64,000 nucleotides of DNA from Macrostomum lignano. Taxonomy: Eukaryota. Positions 17,013 through 64,000 of this stretch are shown piece by piece. Within the stretch, counting starts at the first letter, position 1, and every line of letters begins with the position of its first letter. The stretch covers positions 17,611-81,610 of the forward strand of contig NIVC01003704.1 of assembly GCA_002269645.1 (NCBI GenBank). Reading direction: 5' to 3'. Both the position numbers and the translations under genes were made by a program. Under the pieces are notes generated by a model. That model did not search any database, was not told where the DNA came from, and worked only from the letters and a program-made list of their open reading frames with translations.

Positions 17013-17609
17013 GACAGCCACAAAAAAGTTATTTAACTGGCCGCAAAGCTTCAATCGCTCGGACAGAACTTCGGCTTGCTCCAGGCTCCCTATTTCCCTG
17101 TTTTGCCTTCGTTACCAATAAAGAAAATTCCTGGCGCAAATTGCATTTCTGAAGAGGCCCCACTCTGATGCAAAAGAATTATAGAGAGACTAAAGTCTCT
17201 TTTAGTCAGAAGAGTCAGAGGAAAGAAAAGAACAGAAGACGGCGCGCACGCAGAGACAAGAAGACAGGATTCTGCAGTCAGAAGATATTTAGATAAGCCT
17301 CTTTTTCTCTCCTCTTGAGTCGAGCGAGCAGATGCGACTCAACGGTAATTAGTTACTGATTTGAGATCCCCCGAACCCCCACCGCCTTTGCGCCACTGCT
17401 CAGCTTTGAGCTTGCCCCCCGAGACTTCAAGCTCGGGCTTCAGTCTGAAGAGTGAGTTGATGAAAAATCTCTTTCAATTCGATGGGGGCAATGGAGCGAA
17501 AGTTTCTCTAAAGAGCTTCGCTAGTTTGGATTTTTTAATAACTGTAATAGCTCGCACCTTGTCTCTTCGGTTCACTTTTATTCTGCTCTGCTAAAAGGTG
17601 CTCTCTAAT

Positions 17610-22034: not shown

Positions 22035-23800
22035 CATCATCACCCGAGTCCCCAATCTCATCATCACCCGGGTCCTCATTCCCATCATCACCCGAGTCCC
22101 CAATCTCATCATCACCCGAATCCCCAATCTCATCATCACCCGAGTCCCCAATCTCATCATCACCCGGATCCTCAATCTCATCATCAGCCTGGTCCTCAAT
22201 CTCATCATCACCCGAGTCCCCAATCTCATCATCACCCGAATCCCCAATCTCATCATCACCCGGGTCCCCAATCTCATCATCACCCGAGTCCCCAATCTCA
22301 TCATCACCCGAGTCCCCAATCTCATCATCACCCGAGTCCCCAATCTCATCATCACCCGGATCCTCAATCTCATCATCAGCCTGGTCCTCAATCCCATCAT
22401 CACCCGGGTCCTCAATCCCATCATCACCCGAGTCCCCAATCTCATCATCACCCGAGTCCCCAATCTCATCATCACCCGAGTCCCCAATCTCATCATCACC
22501 CGAGTCCCCAATCTCATCATCACCCGAGTCCCCAATCTCATCATCACCCGAGTCCCCAATCTCATCATCACCCGAGTCCCCAATCTCATCATCACCCGGA
22601 TCCTCAATCTCATCATCAGCCTGGTCCTCAATCCCATCATCACCCGGGTCCTCAATCCCATCATCACCCGGGTCCTCATTCCCATCATCACCCGAGTCCC
22701 CAATCTCATCATCACCCGAGTCCACAATCCCATCATCATCCGGGTCCCCAATCTCATCATCACCCGGGTCCTCATTCCCATCATCACCCGAGTCCCCAAT
22801 CTCATCATCACCCGAGTCCCCAATCTCATCATCACCCGAGTCCCCAATCTCATCATCACCCGAGTCCCCAATCTCATCATCACCCGGATCCTCATTCCCA
22901 TCATCACCCGGGTCCTCAATCCCATCATCACTCCGGTCCTCATTCCCATCATCACCCGGGTCCTCATTCCCATCAACCTGGGTCCTCATTCCCATCATCA
23001 CTTGGGTCCTCAATCCCATCATCACTCCGGTCCTCATTCCTATCATCACCCGGTTCCTCAATCTCATCGTCAGTCTTGTCCTCAATCCCATCATCACTCC
23101 GGTCCTCAATCTCATCATTACCCGGGTCCTCATTCCCATCATCACCCGGGTCCTCATTCCCATCATCACCCGGTTCCTCAATCTCATCGTCAGTCTTGTC
23201 CTCAATCCCATCATCACTCCGGTCCTCAATCTCATCATCACCCGGGTCCTCATTCCCATCATCACCCGGGTCCTCATTCCCATCAACCTGGTCCTCATTC
23301 CCATCATCACCCGGGTCCTCATTCCCATCAACCTGGGTCCTCATTCCCATCATCACTTGGGTCCTCATTCCCATCATCACCCGGGTCCTCATTCCCATCA
23401 TCACCCGGGTCCTCATTCCCATCAACCTGGGTCCTCATTCCCATCATCACTTGGGTCCTCATTCCCATCATCACCCGGGTCCTCATTCCCATCATCACCC
23501 GGGTCCTCATTCCCATCAACCTGGTCCTCATTCCCATCATCACCCGGGTCCTCATTCCCATCAACCTGGGTCCTCATTCCCATCATCACTTGGGTCCTCG
23601 TTCCCATCATCACCCGGGTCCTCAATCTCATCATCACCCGAGTCCTCGTTCCCATCATCACCCGTGTCCTCAATCTCATCATCACCCGTGTCCTCAATCT
23701 CATCATCACCCGGGTCCTCATTCCCATCATCACCCGGGTCCTCATTCCCATCATCACCCGGGTCCTCGTTCCCATCATCACCCGGATCCTCATTCCCATT
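22035..23800. repeat. 24-bp minisatellite (cccaatctcatcatcacccgagtc and variants)
   Basis: Visible directly; ends about 28 nt before the exon 4 acceptor. Confidence 0.97.
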
Positions 23801-23828
23801 ATCAGTCCCGCCTTTGGCTCACCCGCAG

Positions 23829-24102
23829 ATGCCAAGAACCTGGCCGGGGTGTACAATGCCAAGTTTATCGAGATTTCCACCGCGTTAAATCACAACGTCG
23901 ACGAACTGCTGGTAAGCATTCTCGGCCAGATCAAGACCAGCAGCGCAAGATGGAGAAGGAACGGAGCAAGCTCATCAGCAAGGAGAAAGACGGTCGCGGT
24001 CTGCGAGCGTCGATGCGGCTCCGGTCGCCGAGAACAATGATTGGCAACTTTATTAAAAAGCACTTTACATCCAAGTCCTGCGAGGAGGGCGACCACAGCT
24101 AG
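23829..24102 (+). CDS. Rgk: RGK-family GTPase, last exon (G5 motif and C-terminal tail), with a 1-nt frame break near 23933
   Basis: CAG acceptor at 23828, phase 1. First frame gives DAKNLAGVYNAKFIEISTALNHNVDELLVSILGQIK. The -1 frame gives ...RTMIGNFIKKHFTSKSCEEGDHS*, with SKSC and Cys seventh from the end as in RGK proteins. Confidence 0.82.
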
Positions 24103-47310: not shown

Positions 47311-48148
47311 TTGAAAGTCAGTATGAGAGTTGAGGTATAAGTGTTTTAATTTTTCCTCAATTTTCCATATAAATCTGGCTGCAATATCAGTAATAAATAT
47401 CGATATCCTGAGAAACCTTATATTGCTTATGCAACAGTTGCCTATTATTTTGCCTACTTTGCCTATTTTTGTCTATTTTGTCTACTGATTTCACGTATAA
47501 TACGACTATTTTTTTATATTCGATTGAAGAATTCTGTGCCTAATAAATATATGTTTTTAATATTGTTAAGTAGTAAAATAGCATCAATAGTAGCTTTTAG
47601 CCTAATTCTGTATGTTTAATTAGTTTTAATACGTACGCCATTTTTGCCTGTAATACTATAAAAGAGAGAGAGAAAAATAAACGAAGGAGATCTTGCGCTC
47701 GTTGGTTTCCTCCGCCTGCCAATTTTAGACTCCGGTCTTGGCCCCAGCGGTTGTAATTGTTCCAAAAATAGATCTGAATTGGTCTTCAGTTTATGGCCGC
47801 CCGTTAGCGGAGCCCATCCCACGCTAAAAATAGCCCGTTAGCGGGGTCCGCCCCACGGTGGGGTGGGCTCCCTTAGCGCGGGCCAGCCCACAATTATTAG
47901 GATATGCCATTACGGGGCTGTGGAGAAGCAGACGCCAGAACTTGACTCGCATTGGTTGTCAAGATACATGGCACTAATTCAAAAAAGAAAAAAAACTCTT
48001 TTTTCGGCTCCATTGCGTGAGAACTAAATGCAATGACCTTGCCAGGGCGCTAAAATGGGCGCCGAAAGGCTAAAATTGGCGCCGGTAAATTAAAATTGGC
48101 GCCCAAAAGTAGCAAGCTGATATATGCTGCCACTTCTACGCCCGTTGG

Positions 48149-51100
48149 CACATTCCAGCGCTGATTAAGGGATCCTGGCGCCGATTTGGTGATCCTGGCG
48201 CCAAATTTGACTTTCGGCGCCAATTTGAGCTTTCCGCGCCAATTTGAGCTTTCCAGCGCCGATTTGAGCTTTCCAGCGCTGGTCCGGGCTTTTTAGCGCT
48301 GTTTTCAGCATTCCGGCGCTGATTTGGCGATACTGGCGCCGATTTGGTGATCCTAGCGCCAAATTTGACTTTCGGCGCCAATTTGAGCTTTCCGCGCCAA
48401 TTTGAGCTTTCCAGCGCCGATTTGAGCTTTCCAGCGCTGGTCCGGGCTTTTTAGCGCTGATTTCAGCATTCCAGCGCTGATTAAGGGATCCTGGCGCCGA
48501 TTTGGTGATCCTGGCGCCAAATTTGACTTTCGGCGCCAATTTGAGCTTTCCGCGCCAATTTGAGCTTTCCAGCGCCGATTTGAGCTTTCCAGCGCTGGTC
48601 CGGGCTTTTTAGCGCTGTTTTCAGCATTCCGGCGCTGATTTGGCGATACTGGCGCCAAATTTGACTTTCGGCGCCAATTTGAGCTTTCCCGCGCCAATTT
48701 GAGCTTTCCAGCGCCGATTTGAGCTTTCCAGCGCTGGTCCGGGCTTTTTGGCGCTGTTTTCAGCATTCCGGCGCTGATTTGGCGATACTGGCGCCGATTT
48801 GGTGATCCTGGCGCCAAATTTGACTTTCGGCGCCAATTTGAGCTTTCCCGCGCCAATTTGAGCTTTCCAGCGCCGATTTGAGCTTTCCAGCGCTGGTCCG
48901 GGCTTTTTAGCGCTGATTTCAGCATTCCAGCGCTGATTAAGGGATCCTGGCGCCGATTTGGTGATCCTGGCGCCAAATTTGACGTTCCGCGCCAATTTGA
49001 GCTTTCCGCGCCAATTTGAGCTTTCCAGCGCCGATTTGAGCTTTCCAGCGCTGGTCCGGGCTTTTTAGCGCTGTTTTCAGCATTCCGGCGCTGATTTGGC
49101 GATACTGGCGCCAAATTTGGTGATCCTGGCGCCAAATTTGACTTTCGGCGCCAATTTGAGCTTTCCCGCGCCAATTTGAGCTTTCCAGCGCCGATTTGAG
49201 CTTTCCAGCGCTGGTCCGGGCTTTTTAGCGCTGTTTTCAGCATTCCGGCGCTGATTTGGCGATACTGGCGCCGATTTGGTGATCCTGGCGCCAAATTTGA
49301 CTTTCGGCGCCAATTTGAGCTTTCCGCGCCAATTTGAGCTTTCCAGCGCCGATTTGAGCTTTCCAGCGCTGGTCCGGGCTTTTTAGCGCTGATTTCAGCA
49401 TTCCGGCGCTGATTTGGCGATACTGGCGCCGATTTGGTGATCCTGGCGCCAAATTTGACTTTCGGCGCCAATTTGAGCTTTCCGCGCCAATTTGAGCTTT
49501 CCAGCGCCGATTTGAGCTTTCCAGCGCTGGTCCGGGCTTTTTAGCGCTGATTTCAGCATTCCAGCGCTGATTAAGGGATCCTGGCGCCGATTTGGTGATC
49601 CTGGCGCCAAATTTGACTTTCGGCGCCAATTTGAGCTTTCCGCGCCAATTTGAGCTTTCCAGCGCCGATTTGAGCTTTCCAGCGCTGGTCCGGGCTTTTT
49701 GGCGCTGTTTTCAGCATTCCGGCGCTGATTTGGTGATCCTGGCGCCAAATTTGACTTTCAGCGCCAATTTGAGCTTTCCCGCGCCAATTTGAGCTTTCCA
49801 GCGCCGATTTGAGCTTTCCAGCGCTGGTCCGGGCTTTTTAGCGCTGATTTCAGCATTCCAGCGCTGATTTGGCGATACTGGCGCCGATTTGGTGATCCTG
49901 GCGCCAAATTTGACTTTTGGCGCCAATTTGAGCTTTCCGCGCCAATTTGAGCTTTCCAGCGCCGATTTGAGCTTTCCATCGCTGGTCCGGGCTTTTTAGC
50001 GCTGTTTTCAGCATTCCGGCGCTGATTTGGCGATACTGGCGCCGATTTGGTGATCCTGGCGCCAAATTTGGCTTTCGGCGCCAATTTAAGCTTTCCGCGC
50101 CAATTTGAGCTTTCCAGCGCTGGTCCGGGCTTTTTAGCGCTGTTTTCAGCATTCCGGCGCTGATTTGGCGATACTGGCGCCGATTTGGTGATCCTGGCGC
50201 CAAATTTGGCTTTCGGCGCCAATTTAAGCTTTCCGCGCCAATTTGAGCTTTCCAGCGCTGGTCCGGGCTTTTTAGCGCTGTTTTCAGCATTCCGGCGCTG
50301 ATTTGGCGATACTGGCGCCAAATTTGGTGATCCTGGCGCCAAATTTGACTTTCGGCGCCAATTTGAGCTTTCCCGCGCCAATTTGAGCTTTCCAGCGCCG
50401 ATTTGAGCTTTCCAGCGCTGGTCCGGGCTTTTTAGCGCTGATTTCAGCATTCCAGCGCTGATTTGGCGATACTGGCGCCGATTTGGTGATCCTGGCGCCA
50501 AATTTGACTTTCGGCGCCAATTTGAGCTTTCCGCGCCAATTTGAGCTTTCCAGCGCCGATTTGAGCTTTCCAGCGCTGGTCCGGGCTTTTTAGCGCTGAT
50601 TTCAGCATTCCAGCGCTGATTAAGGGATCCTGGCGCCGATTTGGTGATCCTGGCGCCAAATTTGGCTTTCGGCGCCAATTTGAGCTTTCCGCGCCAATTT
50701 GAGCTTTCCAGCGCCGATTTGAGCTTTCCAGCGCTGGTCCGGGCTTTTTAGTGCTGTTTTCAGCATTCCGGCGCTGATTTGGCGATACTGGCGCCGATTT
50801 GGTGATCCTGGCGCCAAATTTGGCTTTCGGCGCCAATTTAAGCTTTCCGCGCCAATTTAAGCTTTCCAGCGCTGGTCCGGGCTTTTTAGCGCTGTTTTCA
50901 GCATTCCGGCGCTGATTTGGCGATACTGGCGCCGATTTGGTGATCCTGGCGCCAAATTTGGCTTTCGGCGCCAATTTAAGCTTTCCGCGCCAATTTGAGC
51001 TTTCCAGCGCTGGTCCGGGCTTTTTAGCGCTGTTTTCAGCATTCCAGCGCTGATTTGGCGATACTGGCGCCGATTTGGTGATCCTGGCGCCAAATTTGAC

Positions 51101-54100
51101 TTTCGGCGCCAATTTGAGCTTTCCGCGCCAATTTGAGCTTTCCAGCGCCGATTTGAGCTTTCCAGCGCTGGTCCGGGCTTTTTAGCGCTGATTTCAGCAT
51201 TCCGGCGCTGATTTGGCGATACTGGCGCCGATTTGGTGATCCTGGCGCCAAATTTGACTTTCGGCGCCAATTTGAGCTTTCCGCGCCAATTTGAGCTTTC
51301 CAGCGCCGATTTGAGCTTTCCAGCGCTGGTCCGGGCTTTTTAGCGCTGATTTCAGCATTCCGGCGCTGATTTGGCGATACTGGCGCCGATTTGGTGATCC
51401 TGGCGCCAAATTTGACTTTCGGCGCCAATTTGAGCTTTCCGCGCCAATTTGAGCTTTCCAGCGCCGATTTGAGCTTTCCAGCGCTGGTCCGGGCTTTTTA
51501 GCGCTGATTTCAGCATTCCAGCGCTGATTAAGGGATCCTGGCGCCGATTTGGTGATCCTGGCGCCAAATTTGACTTTCGGCGCCAATTTGAGCTTTCCGC
51601 GCCAATTTGAGCTTTCCAGCGCCGATTTGAGCTTTCCAGCGCTGGTCCGGGCTTTTTGCGCTGTTTTCAGCATTCCGGCGCTGATTTGGTGATCCTGGCG
51701 CCAAATTTGACTTTCAGCGCCAATTTGAGCTTTCCGCGCCAATTTGAGCTTTCCAGCGCCGATTTGAGCTTTCCAGCGCTGGTCCGGGCTTTTTAGCGCT
51801 GATTTCAGCATTCCAGCGCTGATTTGGCGATACTGGCGCCGATTTGGTGATCCTGGCGCCAAATTTGACTTTTGGCGCAATTTGAGCTTTCCGCGCCAAT
51901 TTGAGCTTTCCAGCGCCGATTTGAGCTTTCCATCGCTGGTCCGGGCTTTTTAGCGCTGTTTTCAGCATTCCGGCGCTGATTTGGCGATACTGGCGCCGAT
52001 TTGGTGATCCTGGCGCCAAATTTGGCTTTCGGCGCCAATTTAAGCTTTCCGCGCCAATTTGAGCTTTCCAGCGCTGGTCCGGGCTTTTTAGCGCTGTTTT
52101 CAGCATTCCGGCGCTGATTTGGCGATACTGGCGCCGATTTGGTGATCCTGGCGCCAAATTTGGCTTTCGGCGCCAATTTAAGCTTTCCGCGCCAATTTGA
52201 GCTTTCCAGCGCTGGTCCGGGCTTTTTAGCGCTGTTTTCAGCATTCCGGCGCTGATTTGGCGATACTGGCGCCGATTTGGTGATCCTGGCGCCAAATTTG
52301 ACTTTCGGCGCCAATTTGAGCTTTCCGCGCCAATTTGAGCTTTCCAGCGCCGATTTGAGCTTTCCAGCGCTGGTCCGGGCTTTTTAGCGCTGATTTCAGC
52401 ATTCCAGCGCTGATTTGGCGATACTGGCGCCGATTTGGTGATCCTGGCGCCAAATTTGACTTTCGGCGCCAATTTGAGCTTTCCGCGCCAATTTGAGCTT
52501 TCCAGCGCCGATTTGAGCTTTCCAGCGCTGGTCCGGGCTTTTTAGCGCTGATTTCAGCATTCCAGCGCTGATTAAGGGATCTGGCGCCGATTTGGTGATC
52601 CTGGCGCCAAATTTGGCTTTCGGCGCCAATTTGAGCTTTCCGCGCCAATTTGAGCTTTCCAGCGCCGATTTGAGCTTTCCAGCGCTGGTCCGGGCTTTTT
52701 AGCGCTGTTTTCAGCATTCCGGCGCTGATTTGGCGATACTGGCGCCGATTTGGTGATCCTGGCGCCAAATTTGGCTTTCGGCGCCAATTTAAGCTTTCCG
52801 CGCCAATTTGAGCTTTCCAGCGCTGGTCCGGGCTTTTTAGCGCTGTTTTCAGCATTCCGGCGCTGATTTGGCGATACTGGCGCCGATTTGGTGATCCTGG
52901 CGCCAAATTTGGCTTTCGGCGCCAATTTAAGCTTTCCGCGCCAATTTGAGCTTTCCAGCGCTGGTCCGGGCTTTTTAGCGCTGTTTTCAGCATTCCGGCG
53001 CTGATTTGGCGATACTGGCGCCGATTTGGTGATCCTGGCGCCAAATTTGACTTTCGGCGCCAATTTGAGCTTTCCGCGCCAATTTGAGCTTTCCAGCGCC
53101 GATTTGAGCTTTCCAGCGCTGGTCCGGGCTTTTTAGCGCTGATTTCAGCATTCCGGCGCTGATTTGGCGATACTGGCGCCGATTTGGTGATCCTGGCGCC
53201 AAATTTGACTTTCGGCGCCAATTTGAGCTTTCCGCGCCAATTTGAGCTTTCCAGCGCCGATTTGAGCTTTCCAGCGCTGGTCCGGGCTTTTTAGCGCTGT
53301 TTCAGCATTCCGGCGCTGATTTGGCGATACTGGCGCCGATTTGGTGATCCTGGCGCCAAATTTGGCTTTCGGCGCCAATTTAAGCTTTCCGCGCCAATTT
53401 GAGCTTTCCAGCGCTGGTCCGGGCTTTTTAGCGCTGTTTTCAGCATTCCGGCGCTGATTTGGCGATACTGGCGCCGATTTGGTGATCCTGGCGCCAAATT
53501 TGGCTTTCGGCGCCAATTTAAGCTTTCCGCGCCAATTTGAGCTTTCCAGCGCTGGTCCGGGCTTTTTAGCGCTGTTTTCAGCATTCCGGCGCTGATTTGG
53601 CGATACTGGCGCCGATTTGGTGATCCTGGCGCCAAATTTGGCTTTCGGCGCCAATTTAAGCTTTCCGCGCCAATTTGAGCTTTCCAGCGCTGGTCCGGGC
53701 TTTTTAGCGCTGTTTTCAGCATTCCGGCGCTGATTTGGCGATACTGGCGCCGATTTGGTGATCCTGGCGCCAAATTTGGCTTTCGGCGCCAATTTAAGCT
53801 TTCCGCGCCAATTTGAGCTTTCCAGCGCTGGTCCGGGCTTTTTAGCGCTGTTTTCAGCATTCCGGCGCTGATTTGGCGATACTGGCGCCGATTTGGTGAT
53901 CCTGGCGCCAAATTTGGCTTTCGGCGCCAATTTAAGCTTTCCGCGCCAATTTGAGCTTTCCAGCGCTGGTCCGGGCTTTTTAGCGCTGTTTTCAGCATTC
54001 CGGCGCTGATTTGGCGATACTGGCGCCATTTGGTGATCCTGGCGCCAAATTTGACTTTCGGCGCCAATTTGAGCTTTCCCGCGCCAATTTGAGCTTTCCA

Positions 54101-55458
54101 GCGCTGGTCCGGGCTTTTTAGCGCTGTTTTCAGCATTCCGGCGCTGATTTGGCGATACTGGCGCCGATTTGGTGATCCTGGCGCCAAATTTGGCTTTCGG
54201 CGCCAATTTAAGCTTTCCGCGCCAATTTGAGCTTTCCAGCGCTGGTCCGGGCTTTTTAGCGCTGTTTTCAGCATTCCAGCGCTGATTTGGCGATACTGGC
54301 GCCGATTTGGTGATCCTGGCGCCAAATTTGACTTTTGGCGCCAATTTGAGCTTTCCGCGCCAATTTGAGCTTTCCAGCGCCGATTTGAGCTTTCCATCGC
54401 TGGTCCGGGCTTTTTAGCGCTGTTTTCAGCATTCCGGCGCTGATTTGGCGATACTGGCGCCGATTTGGTGATCCTGGCGCCAAATTTGACTTTCAGCGCC
54501 AATTTGAGCTTTCCGCGCCAATTTGAGCTTTCCAGCGCCGATTTGAGCTTTCCAGCGCTGGTCCGGGCTTTTTAGCGCTGATTTCAGCATTCCGGCGCTG
54601 ATTTGGCGATACTGGCGCCGATTTGGTGATCCTGGCGCCAAATTTGACTTTCGGCGCCAATTTGAGCTTTCCGCGCCAATTTGAGCTTTCCAGCGCCGAT
54701 TTGAGCTTTCCAGCGCTGGTCCGGGCTTTTTAGCGCTGTTTTCAGCATTCCGGCGCTGATTTGGCGATACTGGCGCCGATTTGGTGATCCTGGCGCCAAA
54801 TTTGGCTTTCGGCGCCAATTTAAGCTTTCCGCGCCAATTTGAGCTTTCCAGCGCTGGTCCGGGCTTTTTAGCGCTGTTTTCAGCATTCCGGCGCTGATTT
54901 GGCGATACTGGCGCCGATTTGGTGATCCTGGCGCCAAATTTGGCTTTCGGCGCCAATTTAAGCTTTCCGCGCCAATTTGAGCTTTCCAGCGCTGGTCCGG
55001 GCTTTTTAGCGCTGTTTTCAGCATTCCGGCGCTGATTTGGCGATACTGGCGCCAAATTTGGTGATCCTGGCGCCAAATTTGACTTTCGGCGCCAATTTGA
55101 GCTTTCCCGCGCCAATTTGAGCTTTCCAGCGCCGATTTGAGCTTTCCAGCGCTGGTCCGGGCTTTTTAGCGCTGATTTCAGCATTCCAGCGCTGATTTGG
55201 CGATACTGGCGCCGATTTGGTGATCCTGGCGCCAAATTTGACTTTTGGCGCCAATTTGAGCTTTCCGCGCCAATTTGAGCTTTCCAGCGCCGATTTGAGC
55301 TTTCCATCGCTGGTCCGGGCTTTTTAGCGCTGATTTCAGCATTCCGGCGCTGATTTGGCGATACTGGCGCCGATTTGGTGATCCTGGCGCCAAATTTGAC
55401 TTTCGGCGCCAATTTGAGCTTTCCGCGCCAATTTGAGCTTTCCAGCGCCGATTTGAGA
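48149..55458. repeat. GC-rich satellite, 158-bp and 138-bp monomers built from 18-21-bp GCGC-core subrepeats, about 7.3 kb
   Basis: Unit cagcattccggcgctgattt-ggcgatactggcgccgattt-ggtgatcctggcgccaaattt-gactttcggcgccaattt-gagctttccgcgccaattt-(gagctttccagcgccgattt)-gagctttccagcgctggtcc-gggctttttagcgctgtttt. Confidence 0.97.
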
Positions 55459-58138
55459 TATCTCATAGTATTTTTTTATTCTATTTTGTATTTTCATGCA
55501 CATTAATCATAGTTTTCGTAGCAATGATTTTCATTTTTATCCATTTGGGATTAAAATATCAAAAGTGTCGTTTTTGGACAAATGTTCTAATCGTTTATAA
55601 AACAAGTCTACTATTAGTATACTCTTGAGCCCCATTCATTGGCAATGGAAATTAATACATCAAAAAGTGACTAAAGTACTTACTACAGCAGCGATAGCTT
55701 TAAAATGATAGTAAGCAACTTCAAATGCTGATTTGGGGATTCTGTCGCGAAATTTGCATGGCTTCCGCGGCGGGTTTATCGTTAAAGATCGTTTGAAGTT
55801 TCGTAGAAAAAAATATTAACACTCTTTCAAATACTATATTATTGCCGAATTAGCCGCTCATATCTAGTTTATCTATTGAATTATTATTAATAATAAATAC
55901 ACTGACATATACTGGCCAAACAGGCTTCTTGCCTGAGCCAAGCTTACTTACTTACTATTAGATATACTTGCATACATACAGACACTTCATTTTTAGTTTC
56001 GTGGATAATTATACAGTTACTTGCTTCTGCTTACTTCAATTTTTGGACTCATGTCTGGAAAGCCCTTTTGGAAAATTTAGTATCTAGCCAAGTTGCAGGT
56101 GGGTTTAAATTGTTCGAGCATATATTTATTGCCTTTTTAACTTAAAATATTGAGTTTGCAAATAGTGGATCTTGATCTTTATTTAATCTTCATGTTAAAA
56201 CTTGGCTTATAGTTATAGGGCAAATAAGACACAGCTCTCACAGACATACCTTAAGACCAATTGTGACCAATTATAATAAGGAAATGAGCATCATATTATC
56301 TATTTAGACATTTTAATAAACTGTGGCCATCTTGGTGTGTGGCCATCTTGGTCATGCACCCCCTGGCCAAGACTTATCACTAATATTAACAAGATGAATA
56401 AGTGGCCCAAAACTATTGCAAGTCAACCAAGGCAATTTTAACTATAAGCTTATGGTTAAAATTGCAAGGCTAAATTGCAATTGCAAGCCTTGCAAGGCTA
56501 TACACTATAGTCTATAGGCTATATCTATATTCTTCCATGATATTCATGATTAATTTTTTTCACTTTTTTGTCCTTTTTGAATGCTTTGCCCTGCAGCCCT
56601 TAGAGAACATGCTATACAAAAATAGTATAGGCCTAGTATAGATATTTAGTATATTTGATTCAATAGAATAAGTGGATAAATGCAGGGTGCCTACACCTTC
56701 CTTTATCTCCTTTATCTCCTGGCTTTATTTGGAAGATTTTTGAGACTTTCTCCTTTATTTTAGCCACTTTAGCTCCTAGGATTTTTAGCACTTGTATTTA
56801 ATGTATTGTTAGTGGTAACAGTCCATTTTGGTAACAAGGGAGGAGATATAACAATATGTATCTTAATGTGCTCTAAAAAATAATTTCAAATAGTTTTTGA
56901 GACAAAAAATAATGTTTTAGGCCTAGACAATGATTTAGCCAACAATGATAAAATTGTTTTAATGTGTTTTGATCAATCTATTTAAATTTCCAGGTGCGCT
57001 TGATACTCAAGATATGTTATGATACAACCTATAAAACTTGTAATTACCAAAGTATTGTGTAATTAGAATTACTTTGAGTTAGAAATGTGAAATTTCAGTA
57101 TTTACTTTAATTTATTTGTCATTAATTACTTTCATTGATCTCTCTAAGTCTCCGCTGTTATATATTCTATCTGTTCAAGTTGAAACAAATTACATGTATA
57201 ATATATCCTAATCAGAAAAAATTGAATGGTAATCAGCAATAAAGTACTAAACAAGTTAATGATTAATTTAATTAATAGTTACTAAAAAATTAACATAAAG
57301 AAAAAGTGCTAAAAGTCATAAATCTGCTTTACCGAAGTGGCTGTTACCAAAGTGGATTGTATTCTTGTTAGTTTAGGGTCCTTTTAAATAATCATTCATT
57401 TTTAAAAAGACTATTTCATTGACTTGTATTATTTTCTTAGGCAAAGGTTTATATATATGATTAGTTACTAATTAAACAAACTTTAAAGCATCAGCCCTAG
57501 GTTAGCCACAATATCAGATATGTGGCACTGTGGAGCTAAAAATGTATACATGTAGTTTTTCTCAAGACTGAAAAATTGGCTAGAAAGATGATGCAATCAA
57601 AGCAGTCAACAAGTAGGCCATAGAATGAAACAACTATGAGAGTACTATGTCCCTTAAGAGCACAACTGGGAGAGTATATGAGAGAGAGCCAGATAAAGGC
57701 TGAGGGGCAGATAAGAGTAGAAAGAAGAATGAATAGGCAATAAGAGAAAGGAAAGGTAAGAGAAAGGATTAAAGAATAGATAAAATATAAATATATAAAA
57801 ATATAATAATTAATACTGAATCTTTTTTCACATACATTGCACTCACACATTTTTATATGCTATAAAGTAGACAAATATATCAGAATAGTAATGCATACAT
57901 AATAAGCTTAAAGTTACTACGTATTGGTTTTGGTAGGTACAAAAGTAATTTATAACAATGATTTACATCAGTGTTTATTCATTATATCATACAAATCCAA
58001 AGTGTCATTTTTGGACAAATGTGTGTTCAGATATGTATGAATCTGTATGAATAAATACGTCTAATAGTATAATATTGAAGTCATACATACATACATACAT
58101 ACTCTTGAATTACAATTTGCATTAAAACATTTCAGGTC

Positions 58139-59474
58139 ATGTCTCGCCGCAGAACATTGTTTTCTAATACAGATTCTGATAGTGATGTCGAAGCTGTATT
58201 GCGGACAAGCCGTCGAGGACGTCCAAGAAAGCTCCAGAAATCTTCTGGTTTTGGTGCCACCCGTCGTCCTAGCTCAAGCTCTGCTTATGGTTCTCATCAG
58301 GATCAGTCGGTAGGGAATTATTTTTTTCCTGAAATGCCTGATAATGCAGCCGAAATGCCGCCTGAAAATTCTACTGAACCTTCAAATCCGCCTGAAGAAA
58401 CTGAGTGGGAGGATCATTCCATGTTTTCGGATCTTCACAGCAATGCGTATGAAAATTATTTCAACTTGGGTTCATGCATTCGTTGCAGTGATGCGCCTGG
58501 AATTTATCGGTGTGTCACTTGTAGGCTGGATTTCTGTGAAGACTGTAAAGAAATCACACATGGTGATTTTGCACCACACAAATTTGAACAGTGGAATTCT
58601 GAGACGCTTATGTTTGCAGATCCAGTGCACGTGCCCATGGTTGCTGCACTTTTCTGTTGTGTGGCAAGCAGAGAGGCTCGCGAATTGTCGGCTGCATCAA
58701 CTGTTGAGCTAATCGATTTGTCGGGAATCGTTCAAGCTCAGATGTTTACGTGTAGTTCATGTGACAAAGTGGATGCGCTTCTCTCAATGGGTTACTTCCC
58801 GTCTTATGATGCAACCGCAACCGCCACAGACTGCACAGCCTATTTCGCCATAAGTTTATTAACACTTCTCGACAATTTGACTACTGTAGGTCGACTACCG
58901 GCTCACAGGGCAATCAAAGCCCTGTTTTTAGGTGCTACTGTTGGCCAAGGAATCTGCAGAGATAAATTAGCATCAAGTTTGTATCAACGTCTGCAACGCC
59001 ACTGTGTTCTGCTAAAATTTAGACAATTACAGATCCGCTCAGCAAAATGGCCCAAGTCGTGTCTCTTGTGTCCCGATCAGCATAATGATCGCCAGACTGT
59101 TGTTTGTGCTGATGCGCTTTTCGGCTGGCAAAGATTTTCTTCAATGGGATTCAGGCAAGCTCTAACTCCGTCAGATGGTCGTCCGCTTCCTGTTCCATTA
59201 GTGAATGTAGATGTCAAAGCAGACGCGCCAAAAAATCGCTTAGAAGAACAAAACTGTCCAAGTTGGAAAGCTGGGGCGCTCGAGCCACCATCCCGAGGTG
59301 CTGGTAGACATGATGTGTATGGCTTTTTTGGACTTTTTTGCCGGCACAATCGTCTATTGAATGGTTGTAACATTACTACGACAGGAGAGCGGTTCTGCTA
59401 CATAGAACAGTGCCTTGAGCATTTTCTAAGAGACACGTCTGTATCGAAGAAATTGCTTCTTATCTATGACGTTG
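58139..59474 (+). CDS. KDZ (Kyakuja-Dileera-Zisupton) transposase, exon 1: Cys-cluster (CxC-type) domain and N-terminal catalytic region
   Basis: C..C...YRC.TC....CEDC....H....H..EQW, then C..C....L...GYFPS....YFA..LL (CxC-like). Also CADALFG, C..WKA, D..GFFG.FCRH, GERF.Y and YDV. Donor G|GTAAGT at 59475. Confidence 0.85.
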
Positions 59475-59559
59475 GTAAGTGCATCTTTTGCATACTATGT
59501 CCGTATAATTTAGCGGGATCAAAATAAAGTACATACATTTTTCTCACATCTCACTGCAG

Positions 59560-60650
59560 GCTGCCGCGTTTCAGCTCGCGTACAATCCGCAGTTACTAAA
59601 TCTGGTGCTAACGTACAGGCCTCTTCATGTGCCATCAATGCATTCCACGCACTTGGCCACAAACCAAGCTGCCAAAGAAGGTTCTCTGTGCGTGTCACTC
59701 CTGGAGCGGGCTTGTGTGATGGCGAGAACACAGAGAGAGCTTGGGCACAACTTCGCCCATATGGGCATTCACTAAAGTACATGCGACCTGATCGTAGGAG
59801 CACCTGTATGTCTCAAATTCTGTTTCATTTCAATGCGAATCAATTGTTTAACACACCCCAGTGGTTCCAGCAACGTCTCAGACTTTTGGACAGTACGATA
59901 AAAAACATGTCTTCGGAAATGAACTCACTTCTTGATGATGCACGAATACAGCAAGCTTCCGGAATTTTAGACGGAAGCTTAGTACTTTCGGAGGTTCAAA
60001 TTCGGAATCTCGGCCGTCAGTGGCATCAGAACTCTCTTATAGGCGCAGTAGAAAACTCTGAAAACGACCTTCTATCTAATATTCGTTCGCTTGCAGTTCT
60101 CAGAGAACATTGGCTGCGACAGTCTGGACTAAATATGGGCCAAGGTCATAACAGAGCTTGCTTGCGCCGTGTACAAGGTTTGACTTCAGAAATGAAAGCT
60201 GATATTAATCGTCTGCCGGAAGAGACCCGGGGTTCTTTTGATCAGTATCGGAAGCCAAATAGTTCAAAGTACGATGGTTTATCTGAATCAGCTACTTCTG
60301 TCCGTTTCCGTCGGCGTGCAATCGATCTCTATCATAAGTACGACAGAGTGAATGAGGAACTGCATATCGTATCTGAGGAATGGTATGACTTTATTGTAAA
60401 AATGGACATGGTTTGCAAGAGTCTAGATAATCAGGCTGGTTTGGCGGCTCAGTTTCGAAAACTATTTCGATCAATTTTAGAAAGAGTTGTAAATCTTGAC
60501 GTTCCAGCAAGGGCAGAATATTTTCGACTCATTTTGGGCGGCGCAGAACAAAGCATTGAAAATGTTCCTCCTATTAGCAACGACTCGCCAACTGAGTCGG
60601 CGACTGAGTCTTCAGCGTCTGAATCGGATGATTCAGAAGATACTTTTTGA
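59560..60650 (+). CDS. KDZ transposase, exon 2
   Basis: 85-nt GT-AG intron 59475-59559. Splicing restores YDVGC, followed by NAFHALGH..SCQ..F and PGAGLCDGENTERAWAQL (KDZ signature G.G..DGE..ER.W). Spliced CDS is 2427 nt (808 aa) with no stops. Confidence 0.85.
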
Positions 60651-61180
60651 GCAAGTTTAAATTTTTTAGTTAGCTGAACACTTCAATTACACAGTGATTT
60701 ATTGTGTCGGCTGTTTCCAAAGCACTTGCAATAAAATTATTCAAAAATTGCTGTGCCAATAGATGTCATTTTTAACCTCACTTGCACACAATAGCTCAAG
60801 TGTGCTGTGAATTCGCTGCTCAGCTGTATCATTCCTGGGTCCATGTGCTCTGCTTACACGTAGCGGACCTGTTAACGTTAATTAATTCAGTTTAATGCAG
60901 TGATGAACTGTCACTCAGTTTATAAACTGGCGCTAAATTGTTTTGATTAACGGAGCCAAAGAGCACTTATTTATTTCGTTACCTTTTATACTACACTTCA
61001 TTGCATGAAAATTAAACTGCCGTTAAGTTGACATTTTCGCCCGTTATGGTGTTATTAAACGATATGTTGGTTGCTTTTTCTCATTTTTAAGTCGTCAATA
61101 TTAGTTAGGACTCAGTTTTCGATCCCGATTGCCATTCTCAAATCCATAGAATCGACTCAAGACCCTAGCTGTAGTCCTAA
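60604..61180 (+). repeat. Direct repeat copy 1 (last 47 nt of the transposase CDS plus downstream region)
   Basis: No difference seen by eye from 62437-62989 over about 553 nt (offset 1833). A short diverged tail follows. Contains AATAAA near 60730. Confidence 0.95.
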
Positions 61181-61372
61181 GTTTTTAGTATCACAAAGAT
61201 TTAGTACTCAATCAATCTGTCTTTCATGTCGACATGTGTCCACCTTTTTACAGATTTCTTATTGAAATCCGAAAGTGATTGTGTTATCTGAAACGAGTCG
61301 GCAAAAATCAATTAATTTACTCTTTTTTGTGGTAATAATCTATCAATCTTTGGCTACGATCACAAATCTACC

Positions 61373-61776
61373 ATGACGACTGAAAAGTACGAGTGCCCTC
61401 TGTGTCTTCCTGGTTTAAGTACCTATAGTGCTCGAGCTGATCGACTTCTTTTGCATGCAACTAAAAAGCATGCTTTAGACGCTAAAAGAGCAAGTTGCAT
61501 AATTCAATATCTTCGTTGGTCCAGAAAGTCAGATGTAAAATTATGCGCGCTATGTGATCAGTTTGCTGTAAATTTGCGAGATCACTACGCTAAATGTCAT
61601 GCGGGCGATTACAGGCGTCTTAACTCCTTATTAACTGGACAACCAGCTATCAGGTTGGCGAGAAAACGTGCTCTGCGGCGATTCGGAGAACTGTACTGGT
61701 GTTTTATTGCCGACCAGCCTTTGCCACGGTATCCGGATTCAAGTTACGAGAACGAAAAACAGGGATTGCACGAGAG
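61373..61776 (+). CDS. Zinc-finger/SET protein, exon 1: two C2H2-like fingers
   Basis: ATG 61373. CPLC-x16-H-x4-H and CALC-x9-H-x4-H. Donor AG|GTGAGT at 61777, phase 2. Confidence 0.75.
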
Positions 61777-61872
61777 GTGAGTAATGTTATTGCCTATCCT
61801 GCTTTTCAAGATTTGATCAGACATGTAAACGGTTGTATAAACCTAAAAATATCTTTGTATATCCTCCCACAG

Positions 61873-62371
61873 AGAACAAGAGTCGCGGGCTGGTAAACAG
61901 TCTTGTCTCCGAATCTATACAAAAGCCTCAAAACTTCTTCCGGCAAAAGTTACAGTTCAGTTAGCGGGTGAGAAGGGTTATGGACTGTTTTCTGATGAGA
62001 ATATCAAGGCGAAGTCATTCGTCTGTTTCTATGGTGGAGCAGTTTTATCCAAAAAAGAAGGGGCGGCTAGGGAAGAAAAGCGATCTCGCGAAGGAGATTC
62101 GCCCGCATTCGCCTTTTTTCTATTTTTATGGTTCAAAATCATTATGCGAAGACGCTACCCTCACTGATTCTGTAGGTCGCTATATTAATCATAGTCGACT
62201 GAACCCAAACTTGGTTCTAGTGTCATATCACCTTGCAAAGACATTGGACGCCACACAAGCCGAATAGGATTTTTTGCATTACATAATATTCCCAAGGGAA
62301 TTGAGTTGCTTTATGATTATGGTGAACGAGATGAAGAGTGTTTGCAAAAGTTTCCGTGGCTAAACTCTTAA
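61873..62371 (+). CDS. PR-Set7/SETD8-like SET-domain lysine methyltransferase, exon 2; reading frame changes by -1 between about 62204 and 62264
   Basis: CACAG acceptor at 61872, phase 2 matches. First frame: GEKGYGLF...FVCFYGG...KSLCEDAT...GRYINHSRLNPNL, then TAG at 62265. The -1 frame: RIGFFALHNIPKGIELLYDYGERDEECLQKFPWLNS*. Both halves align by eye to SETD8 (GRLINHS; EELLYDYGDR...HPWL). Confidence 0.85.
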
Positions 62372-62436: not shown

Positions 62437-63027
62437 CTGAGTCTTCAGCGTCTGAATCGGATGATTCAGAAGATACTTTTTGAGCAAGTTTAAATTTTTT
62501 AGTTAGCTGAACACTTCAATTACACAGTGATTTATTGTGTCGGCTGTTTCCAAAGCACTTGCAATAAAATTATTCAAAAATTGCTGTGCCAATAGATGTC
62601 ATTTTTAACCTCACTTGCACACAATAGCTCAAGTGTGCTGTGAATTCGCTGCTCAGCTGTATCATTCCTGGGTCCATGTGCTCTGCTTACACGTAGCGGA
62701 CCTGTTAACGTTAATTAATTCAGTTTAATGCAGTGATGAACTGTCACTCAGTTTATAAACTGGCGCTAAATTGTTTTGATTAACGGAGCCAAAGAGCACT
62801 TATTTATTTCGTTACCTTTTATACTACACTTCATTGCATGAAAATTAAACTGCCGTTAAGTTGACATTTTCGCCCGTTATGGTGTTATTAAACGATATGT
62901 TGGTTGCTTTTTCTCATTTTTAAGTCGTCAATATTAGTTAGGACTCAGTTTTCGATCCCGATTGCCATTCTCAAATCCATAGAATCGACACCTTAGAATC
63001 GACTTAAGACCCTAGCTGTAGGCCTAA
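62437..63027 (+). repeat. Direct repeat copy 2
   Basis: Starts ctgagtcttcagcgtctg like 60604. Has a 14-nt duplication-type insertion near 62990, then diverges after gaccctagctgtag. Confidence 0.95.
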
Positions 63028-63507
63028 ACTTTGCGCTATCTATAAGAAGTCAGCATCGAATACTTGATCAGTCTTGATGTCATACTTGATACGGACCCCT
63101 CAGCCAGGAGTGCTGTTATCTTTTCTCCAGGCCATTCAGTCATACTAATCTCTTTTTGTATAATGGTACCCTATGGTTATTTAGTTATACTTACTAATAT
63201 TATACAGTGCAACCCTGTCCCCATAATTCAATCAGCTTTAACTAGATGTAACTTTTGCTACTGACTTTCTTCAGTTACTAAAAAAAAAAATGCTATACTT
63301 ATTTCAGCTAGCCACTCGACGCATTGAAATTAAGTCTTCTAAAACACCAATCCAATTATTCAACACTGTTTTAGCCATGCCTAATAACACGCAAAAATCT
63401 GTTGCTTTTTGTGCTCATGACTGGTAGAACGTACCAATTGTGGCGACATCGGGAAAAGTTTCACCCTACCACAACTGATGAGCAGATTCAGGCCATGATT
63501 GATCTGT

Positions 63508-63939
63508 CTAAAGCCAATTCGAAGGCCAAGTCTGTGGCTCTCTGCCCTCTCTGCAGGATATGATTTCTTGCCCTAGAATGCACTTTCGAAACAACCATGC
63601 TTCCGAATTTTCAAACTCCAAGTCGTAGAAAAGACCTGGCAGGTCGGGCTGGCTACTAAGCGAATGAGAAAACAAGCTTCCGTACGTCTGGCAGAGCTTC
63701 GCGACTTGGCAGTTGTAAAAGAAGTGCCATCCACTATGCTCCATTCGATCAAGTAGTCCTGGACATTCAACATCTGGTTTATAAATTACGAAATAAGCGA
63801 GACAGACAAGCGTTGCTCCACTCCGTGCAGCTTCACAACGTGTTGCAGCCTCAACTTCTACTGCGGCATCTAGTCCTAAGCAATCTGATCGGCATTGCAA
63901 CATTTTCTGGGTGCAACTGTGGTGCACCAAGACTGCCTT
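63508..63939 (-). CDS. Possible exon of an unidentified gene running off the window end
   Basis: About 140 open codons of non-repetitive, globular-looking sequence with a possible AAG acceptor near 63937. No family recognised. Confidence 0.3.
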   Translation of the reverse strand, partial: KAVLVHHSCTQKMLQCRSDCLGLDAAVEVEAATRCEAARSGATLVCLAYFVIYKPDVECPGLLDRMEHSGWHFFYNCQVAKLCQTYGSLFSHSLSSQPDLPGLFYDLEFENSEAWLFRKCILGQEIISCREGREPQTWPSNWL

Positions 63940-64000
63940 GTGCTACATCAACAAAAGAATTGCCAATTGTATTCCTAGATGCTCACTAGGAATTTAAAAA

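What the first reader, a model, noticed from the sequence alone, without database searches (positions are those of the whole stretch)
58139..62371. KDZ transposase linked to a zinc-finger + PR-Set7/SETD8-like histone methyltransferase gene
Seen: an intact spliced KDZ transposase (CxC-type cluster; DALFG, FCRH, YDVGC, FHALGH, DGENTERAW) followed about 720 bp later by a co-oriented 2-exon gene joining two C2H2-like fingers to a SET domain of the SETD8 type. Established: SETD8/PR-Set7 monomethylates H4K20, and fungal KDZ transposons are known to travel with chromatin/DNA-modifying genes (TET/JBP). Inference: this is an animal KDZ element carrying its own sequence-targeted H4K20 writer, which could mark its own copies or insertion sites or counter host silencing. 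I cannot confirm whether this pairing has been described.
Basis: partly seen in the sequence, partly recalled or inferred. Interest (0 to 1): 0.92.

Follow-up and report, generated by a model that had tools for sequence, protein, structure and literature searches.

The report
Flatworm KDZ transposon carrying a SET gene
A large, very recently copied DNA transposon of the flatworm Macrostomum lignano carries, next to its KDZ transposase gene, its own zinc-finger/SETD8-like histone-methyltransferase gene, a pairing kept by selection in two anciently separated lineages of the element.

Summary
The window is the last 64 kb of Macrostomum lignano contig NIVC01003704.1.

**Observation:** the KDZ transposase gene is real and intact (808 aa, one intron; Pfam KDZ E=1.6e-31). 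A co-oriented two-exon gene with C2H2-like fingers and a SETD8-like SET domain starts 722 bp downstream. In this window its exon 2 carries two 1-bp indels. These are probably consensus errors near the contig end, because other copies are intact.

**Evidence for a mobile element:**
- Both genes lie inside a dispersed element of at least 16 kb with a precise 5' end at window 47787 (CAGTTTATGG...).
- That end is joined to six unrelated flanks in the assembly.
- 5.7 kb of the element shows no mismatch among seven assembled copies.

**Evidence the pairing is maintained:**
- A second lineage (KDZ 47% identical, synonymous sites saturated) has the same gene set: KDZ, ZnF-SET and a ZnF-only paralogue.
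- The SET domains are only 27-37% identical to canonical flatworm or human SETD8, so they are not the host PR-Set7.
- One copy has lost exactly the SET cassette between 553-bp direct repeats.

**Not established:** the right end, target-site duplications and enzyme activity.

**Verdict:** the transposon-carries-SET reading is supported, but the H4K20 and self-targeting function is inference. It is a new variant of a known kind (transposon-borne chromatin enzymes).

The parts
47787..48176 (+). 5' terminus and unique leader of the element (begins CAGTTTATGGCCGCCCGTTAGCGG)
   Evidence: The same first base is joined to six unrelated left flanks in the window, L015, L016, L018, L021 and L022. The leader is 99.7-100% identical among copies. 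From 47916 onward it is 92% identical to the family-2 leader.
48177..55457 (+). Subterminal satellite array built from about 20-bp units (GGCGCCRATTTGAGCTTTCC; higher-order periods 138/158 bp), one orientation only
   Evidence: TRF; repeat families; motif counts. It is present in every copy of family 1 with variable length, and in family 2 at L004 5476-7170.
55458..58138 (+). AT-rich spacer between the satellite and the KDZ gene (GC about 0.30); no ORF of note
   Evidence: It is identical among family-1 copies and not conserved with family 2.
58139..60650 (+). KDZ transposase gene, 808 aa: exon 1 58139-59474, intron 59475-59559, exon 2 59560-60650
   Evidence: The YDVG|C intron position is shared with the family-2 paralogue.
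60604..61156 (+). Copy 1 of the 553-bp direct repeat: last 47 bp of the KDZ CDS plus 3' region, with AATAAA at 60730 and the palindrome CAGTTTATAAACTG at 60916
61373..62371 (+). ZnF-SET gene (two C2H2-like fingers plus a SETD8-like SET domain): exon 1 61373-61776, intron 61777-61872, exon 2 61873-62371. In this copy there are 1-bp indels at 62114 and about 62216
62437..62989 (+). Copy 2 of the 553-bp direct repeat (100% identical to copy 1); it starts 66 bp after the SET stop
   Evidence: Spacing is the same in family 2. Copy L015 has lost exactly one repeat plus the SET cassette.
63377..64000 (+). 5' part of the third gene, a ZnF-only paralogue of the ZnF module. It is a 272-aa open frame in L001 12005-12823. 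Here it is cut by the contig end and riddled with 1-bp indels

Best explanation
The finding lies inside a large, recently mobile DNA transposon of the KDZ (Kyakuja-Dileera-Zisupton) superfamily in Macrostomum lignano. The part seen in the window runs from 47787 to the contig end, more than 16 kb.

Order of parts:
- 5' terminus (CAGTTTAT...) and a 390-bp leader;
- a 5-7 kb array of 20-bp subterminal repeats;
- an AT-rich spacer;
- the KDZ transposase gene;
- two accessory gene cassettes, each followed by a copy of the transposase gene's 3' region: a ZnF-SET gene (two C2H2-like fingers plus a SETD8-like lysine methyltransferase domain) and a ZnF-only paralogue.

Shown:
- The unit has one exact 5' end attached to six unrelated flanks.
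- Its copies are identical.
- The three-gene set is kept under purifying selection in two lineages whose synonymous sites are saturated.
- The SET is of the SETD8 type but is not the host PR-Set7.
- The SET cassette can be lost by recombination between its flanking repeats.

Inferred:
- The ZnF-SET protein is an active lysine methyltransferase (about 0.6).
- Its fingers bring it to DNA of the element itself, the 20-bp repeat array being the obvious candidate.
- There it monomethylates H4K20 on local nucleosomes, shaping the element's chromatin to the element's benefit (staying expressible and transposable, or self-limiting). I put about 0.3 on this specific mechanism.
- The ZnF-only paralogue would bind the same sites without catalysis, as partner or competitor.

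The confidence given is for the core claim: a mobile KDZ element with a selected ZnF-SET accessory gene.
For: Identity of the genes:
- KDZ Pfam E=1.6e-31.
- SET Pfam E=2e-16, and best PDB sequence matches are SETD8.
- AlphaFold model has pLDDT above 90 over the SET domain; the top 16 Foldseek hits are SET8.
- GxG, NHS, ELLYDYG and C-terminal PWL motifs align with human SETD8.
- The family-2 fingers match CTCF C2H2 fingers at E=1e-6.

Mobility:
- Six different left flanks are joined at the same base.
- There are 0 mismatches in 5699 bp among seven assembled copies, the differences being 1-bp indels near contig ends.
- Five contigs break inside the element.
- There are many annotated copies with consecutive KDZ and SET accessions.

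Linkage under selection:
- A second lineage on NIVC01000910 and related contigs has KDZ (47% identical), a ZnF-only gene and ZnF-SET (38-39% identical).
- pS is 0.75-0.78 (saturated) against pN 0.40-0.46.
- The acidic motifs DALFG, YDVGC and DGENTERAW are invariant.

Not the host gene: 27-37% identity to flatworm and human SETD8, which are 53-71% identical to one another.

Expression: the Mlig_3_7 gene models come only from RNA-seq transcriptional units, and KDZ and SET carry the same unit prefix in both lineages (Mlig001681 g7/g4; Mlig022522 g1/g3). Under the paper's naming rule this implies at least one transcript spanning both (PMC5730564).

Precedent: TET/JBP genes in fungal KDZ elements, and SET genes in HarbingerS and MuDR elements of Phytophthora (PMC12730594).
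Against: - No right terminus, terminal inverted repeat or target-site duplication was found.
- The six flanks could come from as few as three sites if every site is a tail-to-tail pair.
- All family-2 copies fetched share one site.
- Perfect identity among copies could partly reflect assembly polishing or gene conversion.
- The ZnF Pfam matches are below threshold, and the N-terminal model is of low confidence.
- No activity, substrate or DNA-binding data exist.
- The fingers differ by about 62% between the two lineages although the leader and satellite are about 90% alike. This does not fit a simple 'fingers read the satellite' model.
- One copy (L015) lacks the SET cassette, so the SET gene is not needed in cis for that copy to exist.
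- No KDZ+SET pair was found outside M. lignano.
Confidence: 0.72

Rival explanations
1. DNA-break repair helper. The SETD8-like enzyme does not mark the element as such. Instead it methylates H4K20 (or a repair protein) around the double-strand breaks made by the KDZ transposase, promoting 53BP1-type end joining at donor and target sites. This would resemble what has been proposed for the SET domain of SETMAR/Metnase. The fingers would help it to sit at the element's ends.
For: - The gene is linked to, and probably co-transcribed with, a cut-and-paste transposase that keeps its catalytic motifs (PMC5730564).
- The fold is SETD8-type.
- From general knowledge: SETD8 and H4K20me1/2 act in 53BP1 recruitment.
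Against: There is no direct evidence. It does not explain why a ZnF-only paralogue is also kept, nor the huge repeat array. The host presumably has its own SETD8.
Confidence: 0.2
2. Domesticated or immobile gene cluster. KDZ, ZnF-SET and ZnF-only are now host genes. Their many copies arise from the recent genome duplication, extra chromosomes and segmental (including inverted) duplications of M. lignano, and from redundant assembly, rather than from transposition.
For: [quoted passage not shown]
- All family-2 copies and several family-1 copies share flanks and are collinear over 15-18 kb.
- The genes passed a filter that removed transcripts overlapping annotated repeats.
- No TIR or TSD was found.
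- Both lineages are under purifying selection.
Against: - Six unrelated flanks meet the unit at one exact nucleotide, which segmental duplication does not produce.
- Copies at different flanks have no substitutions over 5.7 kb.
- Contigs break inside the unit, as they do at long identical repeats.
Confidence: 0.12
3. Functionless passenger. The ZnF-SET cassette is a captured gene that rides along (as in Pack-MULE or CACTA gene capture) and does nothing for the element. In this window it is simply a pseudogene.
For: - This copy has two frameshifts and three in-frame stops.
- One copy has lost the cassette.
- The cassette is bracketed by direct repeats, like a recombination product.
Against: - The frameshifts sit in a stretch where 1-bp indels pile up towards the contig end, and the other copies are intact.
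- The same architecture is intact in a lineage with saturated synonymous divergence and pN well below pS.
- Catalytic motifs are kept.
- The gene is transcribed.
Confidence: 0.08

Closest known systems
Fungal KDZ (Kyakuja/Dileera/Zisupton) transposons that carry TET/JBP dioxygenase genes (Iyer et al. 2014, from memory; PMC12730594)
   Same: Same transposase superfamily (Pfam KDZ). A separate, co-oriented accessory gene for an enzyme that writes or edits an epigenetic mark, kept in more than one lineage. CA...-type terminus: Kyakuja ends in 5'-CA..TG-3' with no TIRs, and here the end is 5'-CAG.
   Different: The host is an animal (flatworm), not a fungus. The accessory enzyme acts on protein lysines (SET), not on DNA bases. 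It is fused to C2H2-like fingers and comes with a finger-only paralogue. There are kilobase-scale subterminal satellite arrays. The TSD length and the right end are unknown here.
SET-carrying DNA transposons of Phytophthora: HarbingerS and some MuDR families (Kojima & Jurka, Repbase Reports 2014, as cited in PMC12730594)
   Same: DNA transposons that have incorporated a SET histone-lysine methyltransferase gene.
   Different: Different transposase superfamilies (Harbinger, MuDR) and a different host kingdom (oomycetes). I could not read the original reports, so the type of SET domain and any finger fusion there were not compared.
SETD8 / PR-Set7 / KMT5A, the H4K20 monomethyltransferase
   Same: Best sequence and structure match. 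No Cys-rich pre-SET or post-SET domains. The NHS and ELLYDYG motifs, both tyrosines of the Phe/Tyr switch region, and the C-terminal PWL motif two to three residues from the end are all kept.
   Different: Only 27-37% identical to canonical flatworm and human enzymes. The N-terminus is a pair of C2H2-like fingers instead of the disordered, PCNA-linked regulatory region. The gene is multi-copy and transposon-linked. The substrate is untested.
SETMAR (Metnase), the primate SET-mariner fusion
   Same: A SET methyltransferase functionally coupled to a DNA transposase and a sequence-specific DNA-binding module.
   Different: SETMAR is one fused host protein made by a transposon landing next to a host SET gene, and it is immobile. 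Here the SET and the transposase are separate genes inside a mobile element. The SET families also differ.
VANC anti-silencing proteins of Arabidopsis VANDAL (MuDR) transposons (cited in PMC12730594)
   Same: An accessory gene of a DNA transposon that changes the element's own epigenetic state in a sequence-specific way. This is the model for the proposed mode of action.
   Different: VANC is not an enzyme of known fold and acts on DNA methylation. No sequence relation.

Membership tests
KDZ transposase superfamily / KDZ DNA transposon | Transposase domain matching Pfam PF18758 above the curated threshold | tested here: met
   110.2 bits against a cut-off of 26.6, E=1.6e-31, covering profile positions 3-216 of 217. 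The paralogue P0005 scores 118.7 bits.
KDZ transposase superfamily / KDZ DNA transposon | Conserved acidic catalytic residues of the RNase H-like fold | tested here: inconclusive
   D325 (CADALFG), D444 (IYDVGC) and E501/E504 (DGENTERAW) are invariant between two paralogues that are 46% identical. Assigning them to the catalytic triad rests on memory of the family description, not on a structure or an alignment to characterised members.
KDZ transposase superfamily / KDZ DNA transposon | N-terminal CxC-type cysteine cluster | tested here: inconclusive
   CxC1 scores 17.4 bits, below the 26.9 cut-off. B-box-like scores 17.3 bits, below 24.1. UniRef names a fragment of the same cluster 'CxC2 domain-containing'.
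KDZ transposase superfamily / KDZ DNA transposon | Dispersed copies with defined termini | tested here: met
   Met for the 5' end only: one exact terminus with six unrelated flanks.
KDZ transposase superfamily / KDZ DNA transposon | Target-site duplication of 7-8 bp and a matching second end | tested here: inconclusive
   No copy was available with both ends. There was no inverted copy of the 5' end in the fetched DNA and no convincing TIR.
SETD8 / PR-Set7 / KMT5A | SET domain whose closest characterised relatives by sequence and fold are SETD8 | tested here: met
   PDB phmmer top 12 hits are all SETD8/KMT5A. Foldseek top 16 hits are all SET8.
SETD8 / PR-Set7 / KMT5A | Catalytic and cofactor motifs (GxG, RxxNHS, ELxYDY) and the C-flanking PWL helix, without Cys-rich pre-SET or post-SET domains | tested here: met
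   Alignment with human SETD8; invariant columns in the 36-sequence alignment.
SETD8 / PR-Set7 / KMT5A | Orthology with the host's single-copy PR-Set7 | tested here: not met
   27-37% identity to Schistosoma, Calicophoron, Hymenolepis and human SETD8, which share 53-71% with each other. It falls outside their clade in a neighbour-joining tree with weak support. It is multi-copy and transposon-linked. M. lignano's own PR-Set7 was not retrieved.
SETD8 / PR-Set7 / KMT5A | Monomethylation of histone H4 lysine 20 on nucleosomes | not testable with these tools
   Needs an enzyme assay.
C2H2 zinc-finger DNA-binding proteins | C-x2-4-C-x12-H-x3-5-H fingers recognised by curated models | tested here: inconclusive
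   Family-2 finger 1 has canonical spacing. zf-C2H2 scores 21.5 bits (cut-off 25.2) and zf-H2C2_5 scores 24.4 bits (cut-off 27). It matches CTCF fingers at E=1.3e-6. The window's first finger has a 16-residue spacer and only weak matches. The model of this part has low confidence.

The most novel reading that the evidence does not exclude
An active animal DNA transposon encodes its own sequence-targeted histone writer. The ZnF-SET protein binds the element's 20-bp subterminal repeat array and lays down H4K20me1 (or another lysine mark) on the element's own nucleosomes, with the ZnF-only paralogue tuning it. This would give the transposon control over its own chromatin state (escape from piRNA/H3K9-type silencing, or licensing of transposition). 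It would be a histone-level counterpart of the TET/JBP genes of fungal KDZ elements.
Probability: 0.22. Interest if true: 0.85.

Novelty: new variant of a known kind. Interest (0 to 1): 0.64.

Why it matters
Transposons that carry enzymes acting on epigenetic marks are known from fungi (TET/JBP) and oomycetes (SET). They are read as weapons in the conflict over silencing. In the literature I could search I found no animal case of a cut-and-paste transposon with its own histone methyltransferase.

This case has three useful properties:
- The element looks recently active: copies are identical and flanks differ.
- The accessory gene has been kept through a very deep split of the element lineage, which argues that it does something for the element.
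- The host is a laboratory flatworm with transgenesis, RNAi, and piRNA and neoblast data, so the function can be tested directly.

The case also bears on how new chromatin regulators with DNA-targeting modules arise, and on the function of SETD8-like domains outside the canonical cell-cycle enzyme.

Tried and rejected
Searches that found nothing useful:
- Two scans of metagenome contigs with KDZ patterns found nothing.

Leads that turned out not to be transposon contexts:
- P0003, a 37%-identical SET protein, sits among housekeeping genes of an unrelated compact eukaryote.
- The closest SET-only relatives, P0013 and P0015, lie on marine metagenome contigs without KDZ.

Element ends:
- Searches for terminal inverted repeats in 10-16 kb around both loci gave only short AT-rich chance pairs.
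- There are no inverted copies of the satellite motif or of the 5' terminus downstream.
- I tried to pair left flanks as reverse-complement target-site duplications by inspecting the flank ends printed, and to match the right flank of L003 to any left flank. Neither gave a result.

A reading I abandoned: I first read the 3-4 near-identical copies as one locus assembled redundantly. I dropped this when more copies showed six different flanks.

Other rejected ideas:
- A simple tandem duplication as the origin of the 553-bp repeats. The repeats are 100% identical while the genes they follow are only about 28% identical in the finger region. Concerted evolution or recent recombination fits better.
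- The leader-plus-satellite as an unrelated neighbouring repeat. It is collinear with the KDZ gene in all six copies that have distinct flanks.

Not informative: the bacterial promoter/terminator scan is not meaningful for this eukaryotic sequence. The Iyer et al. 2014 paper is not held in the library, so what I say about it is from memory.


Full report
**Where the window comes from**

The ZnF-SET and KDZ proteins match annotated proteins of the flatworm Macrostomum lignano. The window aligns base for base with the last 64 kb of contig NIVC01003704.1 of assembly GCA_002269645.1 (Mlig_3_7). That contig ends 3350 bp after the KDZ gene, exactly as the window does, and both give the same alignment to L001. 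So window position 64000 is a contig end. The first 47 kb of the window are mostly micro- and minisatellites with scattered host exons.

**Checking the observation**

- The KDZ gene is as described. Exon 1 is 58139-59474, the GT..AG intron is 59475-59559 and exon 2 is 59560-60650, giving 808 aa.
- Pfam KDZ scores 110 bits (E=1.6e-31). The CxC1 and B-box-like matches are below threshold.
- The second gene starts 722 bp after the KDZ stop. Exon 1 (61373-61776) encodes two C2H2-like fingers. After the intron (61777-61872), exon 2 (61873-62371) encodes a SET domain.
- As written in the window, the spliced frame has three stops.
- Alignment with three other assembled copies shows an extra T at 62114 and a missing C near 62216. 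There are no other differences from 55458 to 62113. After 63364 there is a crowd of about 20 single-base indels and only three substitutions.
- A rise of 1-bp indels towards a contig end is typical of poorly covered long-read consensus, and contig L003 shows the same at its own start. I therefore read the two frameshifts as probable errors, not as decay of the gene.
- The corrected protein equals the annotated 300-aa P0001.

**The SET domain is of the SETD8 type**

- The best PDB sequence matches are all SETD8/KMT5A (E about 3e-13).
- An AlphaFold model built with 36 relatives has pLDDT above 90 over residues 160-300. Its top 16 structural matches are all SET8, with TM about 0.8 on the target.
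- The GxG, NHS and ELLYDYG motifs, and a PWL motif two to three residues from the C-terminus, align with human SETD8.
- It is not the host PR-Set7. Canonical enzymes of Schistosoma, Calicophoron and Hymenolepis are 53-55% identical to the human one and 66-71% to each other. The two Macrostomum SETs are 27-37% identical to all of these and 35% to each other.

**The linkage is conserved in a second, old lineage**

- A paralogous KDZ protein (P0005, 47% identical) lies on another contig (L004).
- It is followed, in the same orientation, by a small ZnF-only ORF and then a ZnF-SET gene of 409 aa.
- The ZnF-SET proteins of the two lineages are 38-39% identical in both the finger region and the SET domain.
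- Between the lineages synonymous sites are saturated (pS 0.75-0.78), while non-synonymous differences are 0.40-0.46. All reading frames are intact, and the acidic motifs of the transposase are invariant. Both genes have therefore been under purifying selection since an old split.
- The intron within YDVG|C is shared.
- The window lineage also has a third gene: a ZnF-only paralogue of the finger module. It is a 272-aa open frame in L001 12005-12823. In the window it starts at 63377 and is cut by the contig end.
- Gene order differs: KDZ, ZnF-SET, ZnF-only in the window; KDZ, ZnF-only, ZnF-SET in L004.

**Repeats around the cassettes**

- In the window a 553-bp segment (60604-61156) recurs with 100% identity at 62437-62989, 66 bp after the SET stop. 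It begins 47 bp before the KDZ stop and contains AATAAA at 60730.
- A third, partial copy (250 bp, 97.6%) follows the ZnF-only gene.
- The second lineage has its own 295-bp repeat after the KDZ gene and again 66 bp after the SET stop.
- One copy of the window lineage (L015) goes straight from the KDZ gene and one repeat to the ZnF-only gene. It lacks exactly 1833 bp, which is one repeat plus the SET cassette. This is the expected product of recombination between the repeats.
- The SET cassette is present in six assembled copies with sequence at that place (window, L001, L002/L016, L003, L018, L021) and absent in one (L015).

**The pair lies inside a mobile element**

- A look-up of cluster members showed many more annotated copies than the first searches did, with KDZ and SET under consecutive accession numbers.
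- After fetching them, six copies of the window lineage (window, L015, L016, L018, L021, L022) are collinear from a common first base at window 47787 (CAGTTTATGGCCGCCCGTTAGCGG).
- To the left of that base the six sequences share nothing with one another.
- Over the spacer, KDZ gene and first repeat (5699 bp) seven assembled copies (window, L001, L015, L016, L018, L021, L022) show no mismatch, only 1-bp indels near contig ends.
- Five contigs start or stop inside the unit, as assemblies do at long identical repeats.
- One exact end on unrelated flanks, together with identical copies, is the signature of a recently active transposable element, not of segmental duplication.
- The element's parts in window coordinates are: 5' end and leader 47787-48176; array of 20-bp units 48177-55457 (5-7 kb in other copies); AT-rich spacer; KDZ; and the cassettes.

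**What remains open about the element**

- I found no second end, no terminal inverted repeat and no target-site duplication.
- Downstream of the third gene all copies with sequence share a LINE fragment and a 387-bp tandem array.
- On two contigs a second copy follows in inverted orientation, tail to tail. If all sites are such pairs, the six flanks stand for at least three sites. The pair itself, with the CAGTTTAT end at both extremes, might even be the transposing unit.
- All fetched copies of the second lineage sit at one site. Its 5' end reads CAGTTTCCCACGCTAAAAATAG.
- Oddly, the leader and satellite are about 90% identical between the two lineages although the genes are saturated. This points to exchange of ends between lineages or to strong constraint on these cis sequences.
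- A 14-nt palindrome, CAGTTTATAAACTG, sits in every copy of the 553-bp repeat and shares its first 8 nt with the 5' terminus. The second lineage has CAGTTTATAAAC 29 nt after its KDZ stop. Whether these are alternative ends is untested.

**Expression**

- The Mlig_3_7 gene models derive only from RNA-seq-based transcriptional units. Units that cluster at 95% share a name prefix, and genes are cut out of units at trans-splicing and poly(A) sites (PMC5730564).
- KDZ and ZnF-SET share the prefix in both lineages: Mlig001681 g7 and g4; Mlig022522 g1 and g3; Mlig004599 g2 and g4.
- By that rule at least one assembled transcript spans both genes. This is an inference from the naming rule, not a check of reads.

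**Distribution elsewhere**

- An exhaustive HMMER search with the ZnF-SET protein found only three proteins below 1e-30: the query P0001 itself, an unrelated sea-cucumber protein with tandem SET repeats (P0007), and the family-2 protein (P0008).
- One further protein has the same fingers-plus-SET architecture (P0009, E=6e-22). It lies on a 1.7-kb contig from run SRR19430222, organism unknown.
- The other hits are SET-only.
- No KDZ relatives outside M. lignano could be recovered with the tools available, so I cannot say whether KDZ elements of other animals carry SET genes.

**How it most likely works**

- Shown: a mobile KDZ element with a selected, transcribed ZnF-SET accessory gene of SETD8 type.
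- Inferred: the protein is an active lysine methyltransferase. Its fingers bind DNA; those of the second lineage match CTCF fingers at E=1e-6.
- The most economical model, by analogy with TET/JBP genes in fungal KDZ elements and with SET genes in oomycete transposons (PMC12730594), is that it acts on the element's own chromatin. The dense 20-bp repeat array is the obvious landing pad.
- I put about 0.3 on that specific mechanism and about 0.2 on a break-repair role of the SETMAR kind.
- Against the simple landing-pad model: the fingers have diverged far more than the repeats between the two lineages.

**Comparison with what is known, and novelty**

- Transposon-borne epigenetic enzymes are a known kind.
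- I found no paper describing a KDZ element with a SET gene, or an animal DNA transposon with its own histone methyltransferase. This is absence within the searchable library only.
- I therefore class the finding as a new variant of a known kind.
- It is of real interest because the element looks active and the host is experimentally tractable.

Noticed in passing
window 62114, ~62216 and 63364-64000: Single-base indels relative to other assembled copies pile up towards position 64000, which is the end of contig NIVC01003704.1. Substitutions are almost absent. Reading frames in the last 2 kb of this window should not be trusted.
   Followed up: yes
window 47916-55457 and L004 5216-7170: The leader and the satellite of 20-bp units are about 90% identical between the two element lineages, although their genes are saturated at synonymous sites. 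This suggests exchange of ends between lineages or strong constraint on these cis sequences.
   Followed up: partly
window 60916-60929 and 62749-62762; L001 13139-13152; L004 12874-12885: The palindrome CAGTTTATAAACTG occurs in every copy of the 553-bp repeat. Its first 8 nt equal the element's 5' terminus. A 12-nt version lies 29 nt after the KDZ stop of the other lineage. These may be internal or alternative ends.
   Followed up: partly
L015 (NIVC01001431.1) versus L001; L002 19045-20999: On two contigs, two copies of the element lie tail to tail in inverted orientation around a 387-bp tandem array and a centre of about 250 bp. One arm (L015) lacks the SET cassette. This could be a real palindrome, the natural form of the element, or an assembly artefact.
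   Followed up: partly
L001 ~13570-13712 and 14959-18005: A fragment of a LINE reverse transcriptase (..NGFRPRRGTVTQILALR) and a 387-bp tandem array are shared by all copies with downstream sequence. L003 leaves the shared sequence at 9477, inside the array.
   Followed up: partly
L014 5330-8659: A 3.3-kb insertion that is absent from the otherwise 99% identical L004. It is flanked by a duplicated TACTAG (L004 8660-8665) and is probably another transposon.
   Followed up: no
L004 119-4237: A long ORF with a Ty3/gypsy-type integrase lies just upstream of the second-lineage element.
   Followed up: no
L006 (Logan SRR19430222, 1683 bp): An intronless ORF (P0009, 349 aa) has the same two-finger plus SETD8-like architecture. 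A tRNA-like SINE sequence lies upstream. The organism is unknown and the contig is too short to show neighbours.
   Followed up: partly
P0007 (Holothuria leucospilota KAJ8048607.1): A sea-cucumber protein annotated 'set-1' consists of eight tandem partial SET-domain repeats.
   Followed up: no
L007-L013 (marine metagenome contigs): The closest SET-only relatives (40-45% identity) are short proteins of 139-182 aa on marine metagenome contigs. One 21-kb contig is full of small unannotated ORFs and may be a giant virus or a protist.
   Followed up: no
window 1-47786: This stretch is almost entirely micro- and minisatellite arrays (GTCT, TAGA and units of 11-50 bp). Scattered host exons include the C-terminus of a Ras-like GTPase within ORF 21962-24040.
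   Followed up: no
window 55558-55585 and 57995-58022: A 28-nt direct repeat (93% identical), with copies 2437 bp apart, brackets most of the AT-rich spacer upstream of the KDZ gene.
   Followed up: no
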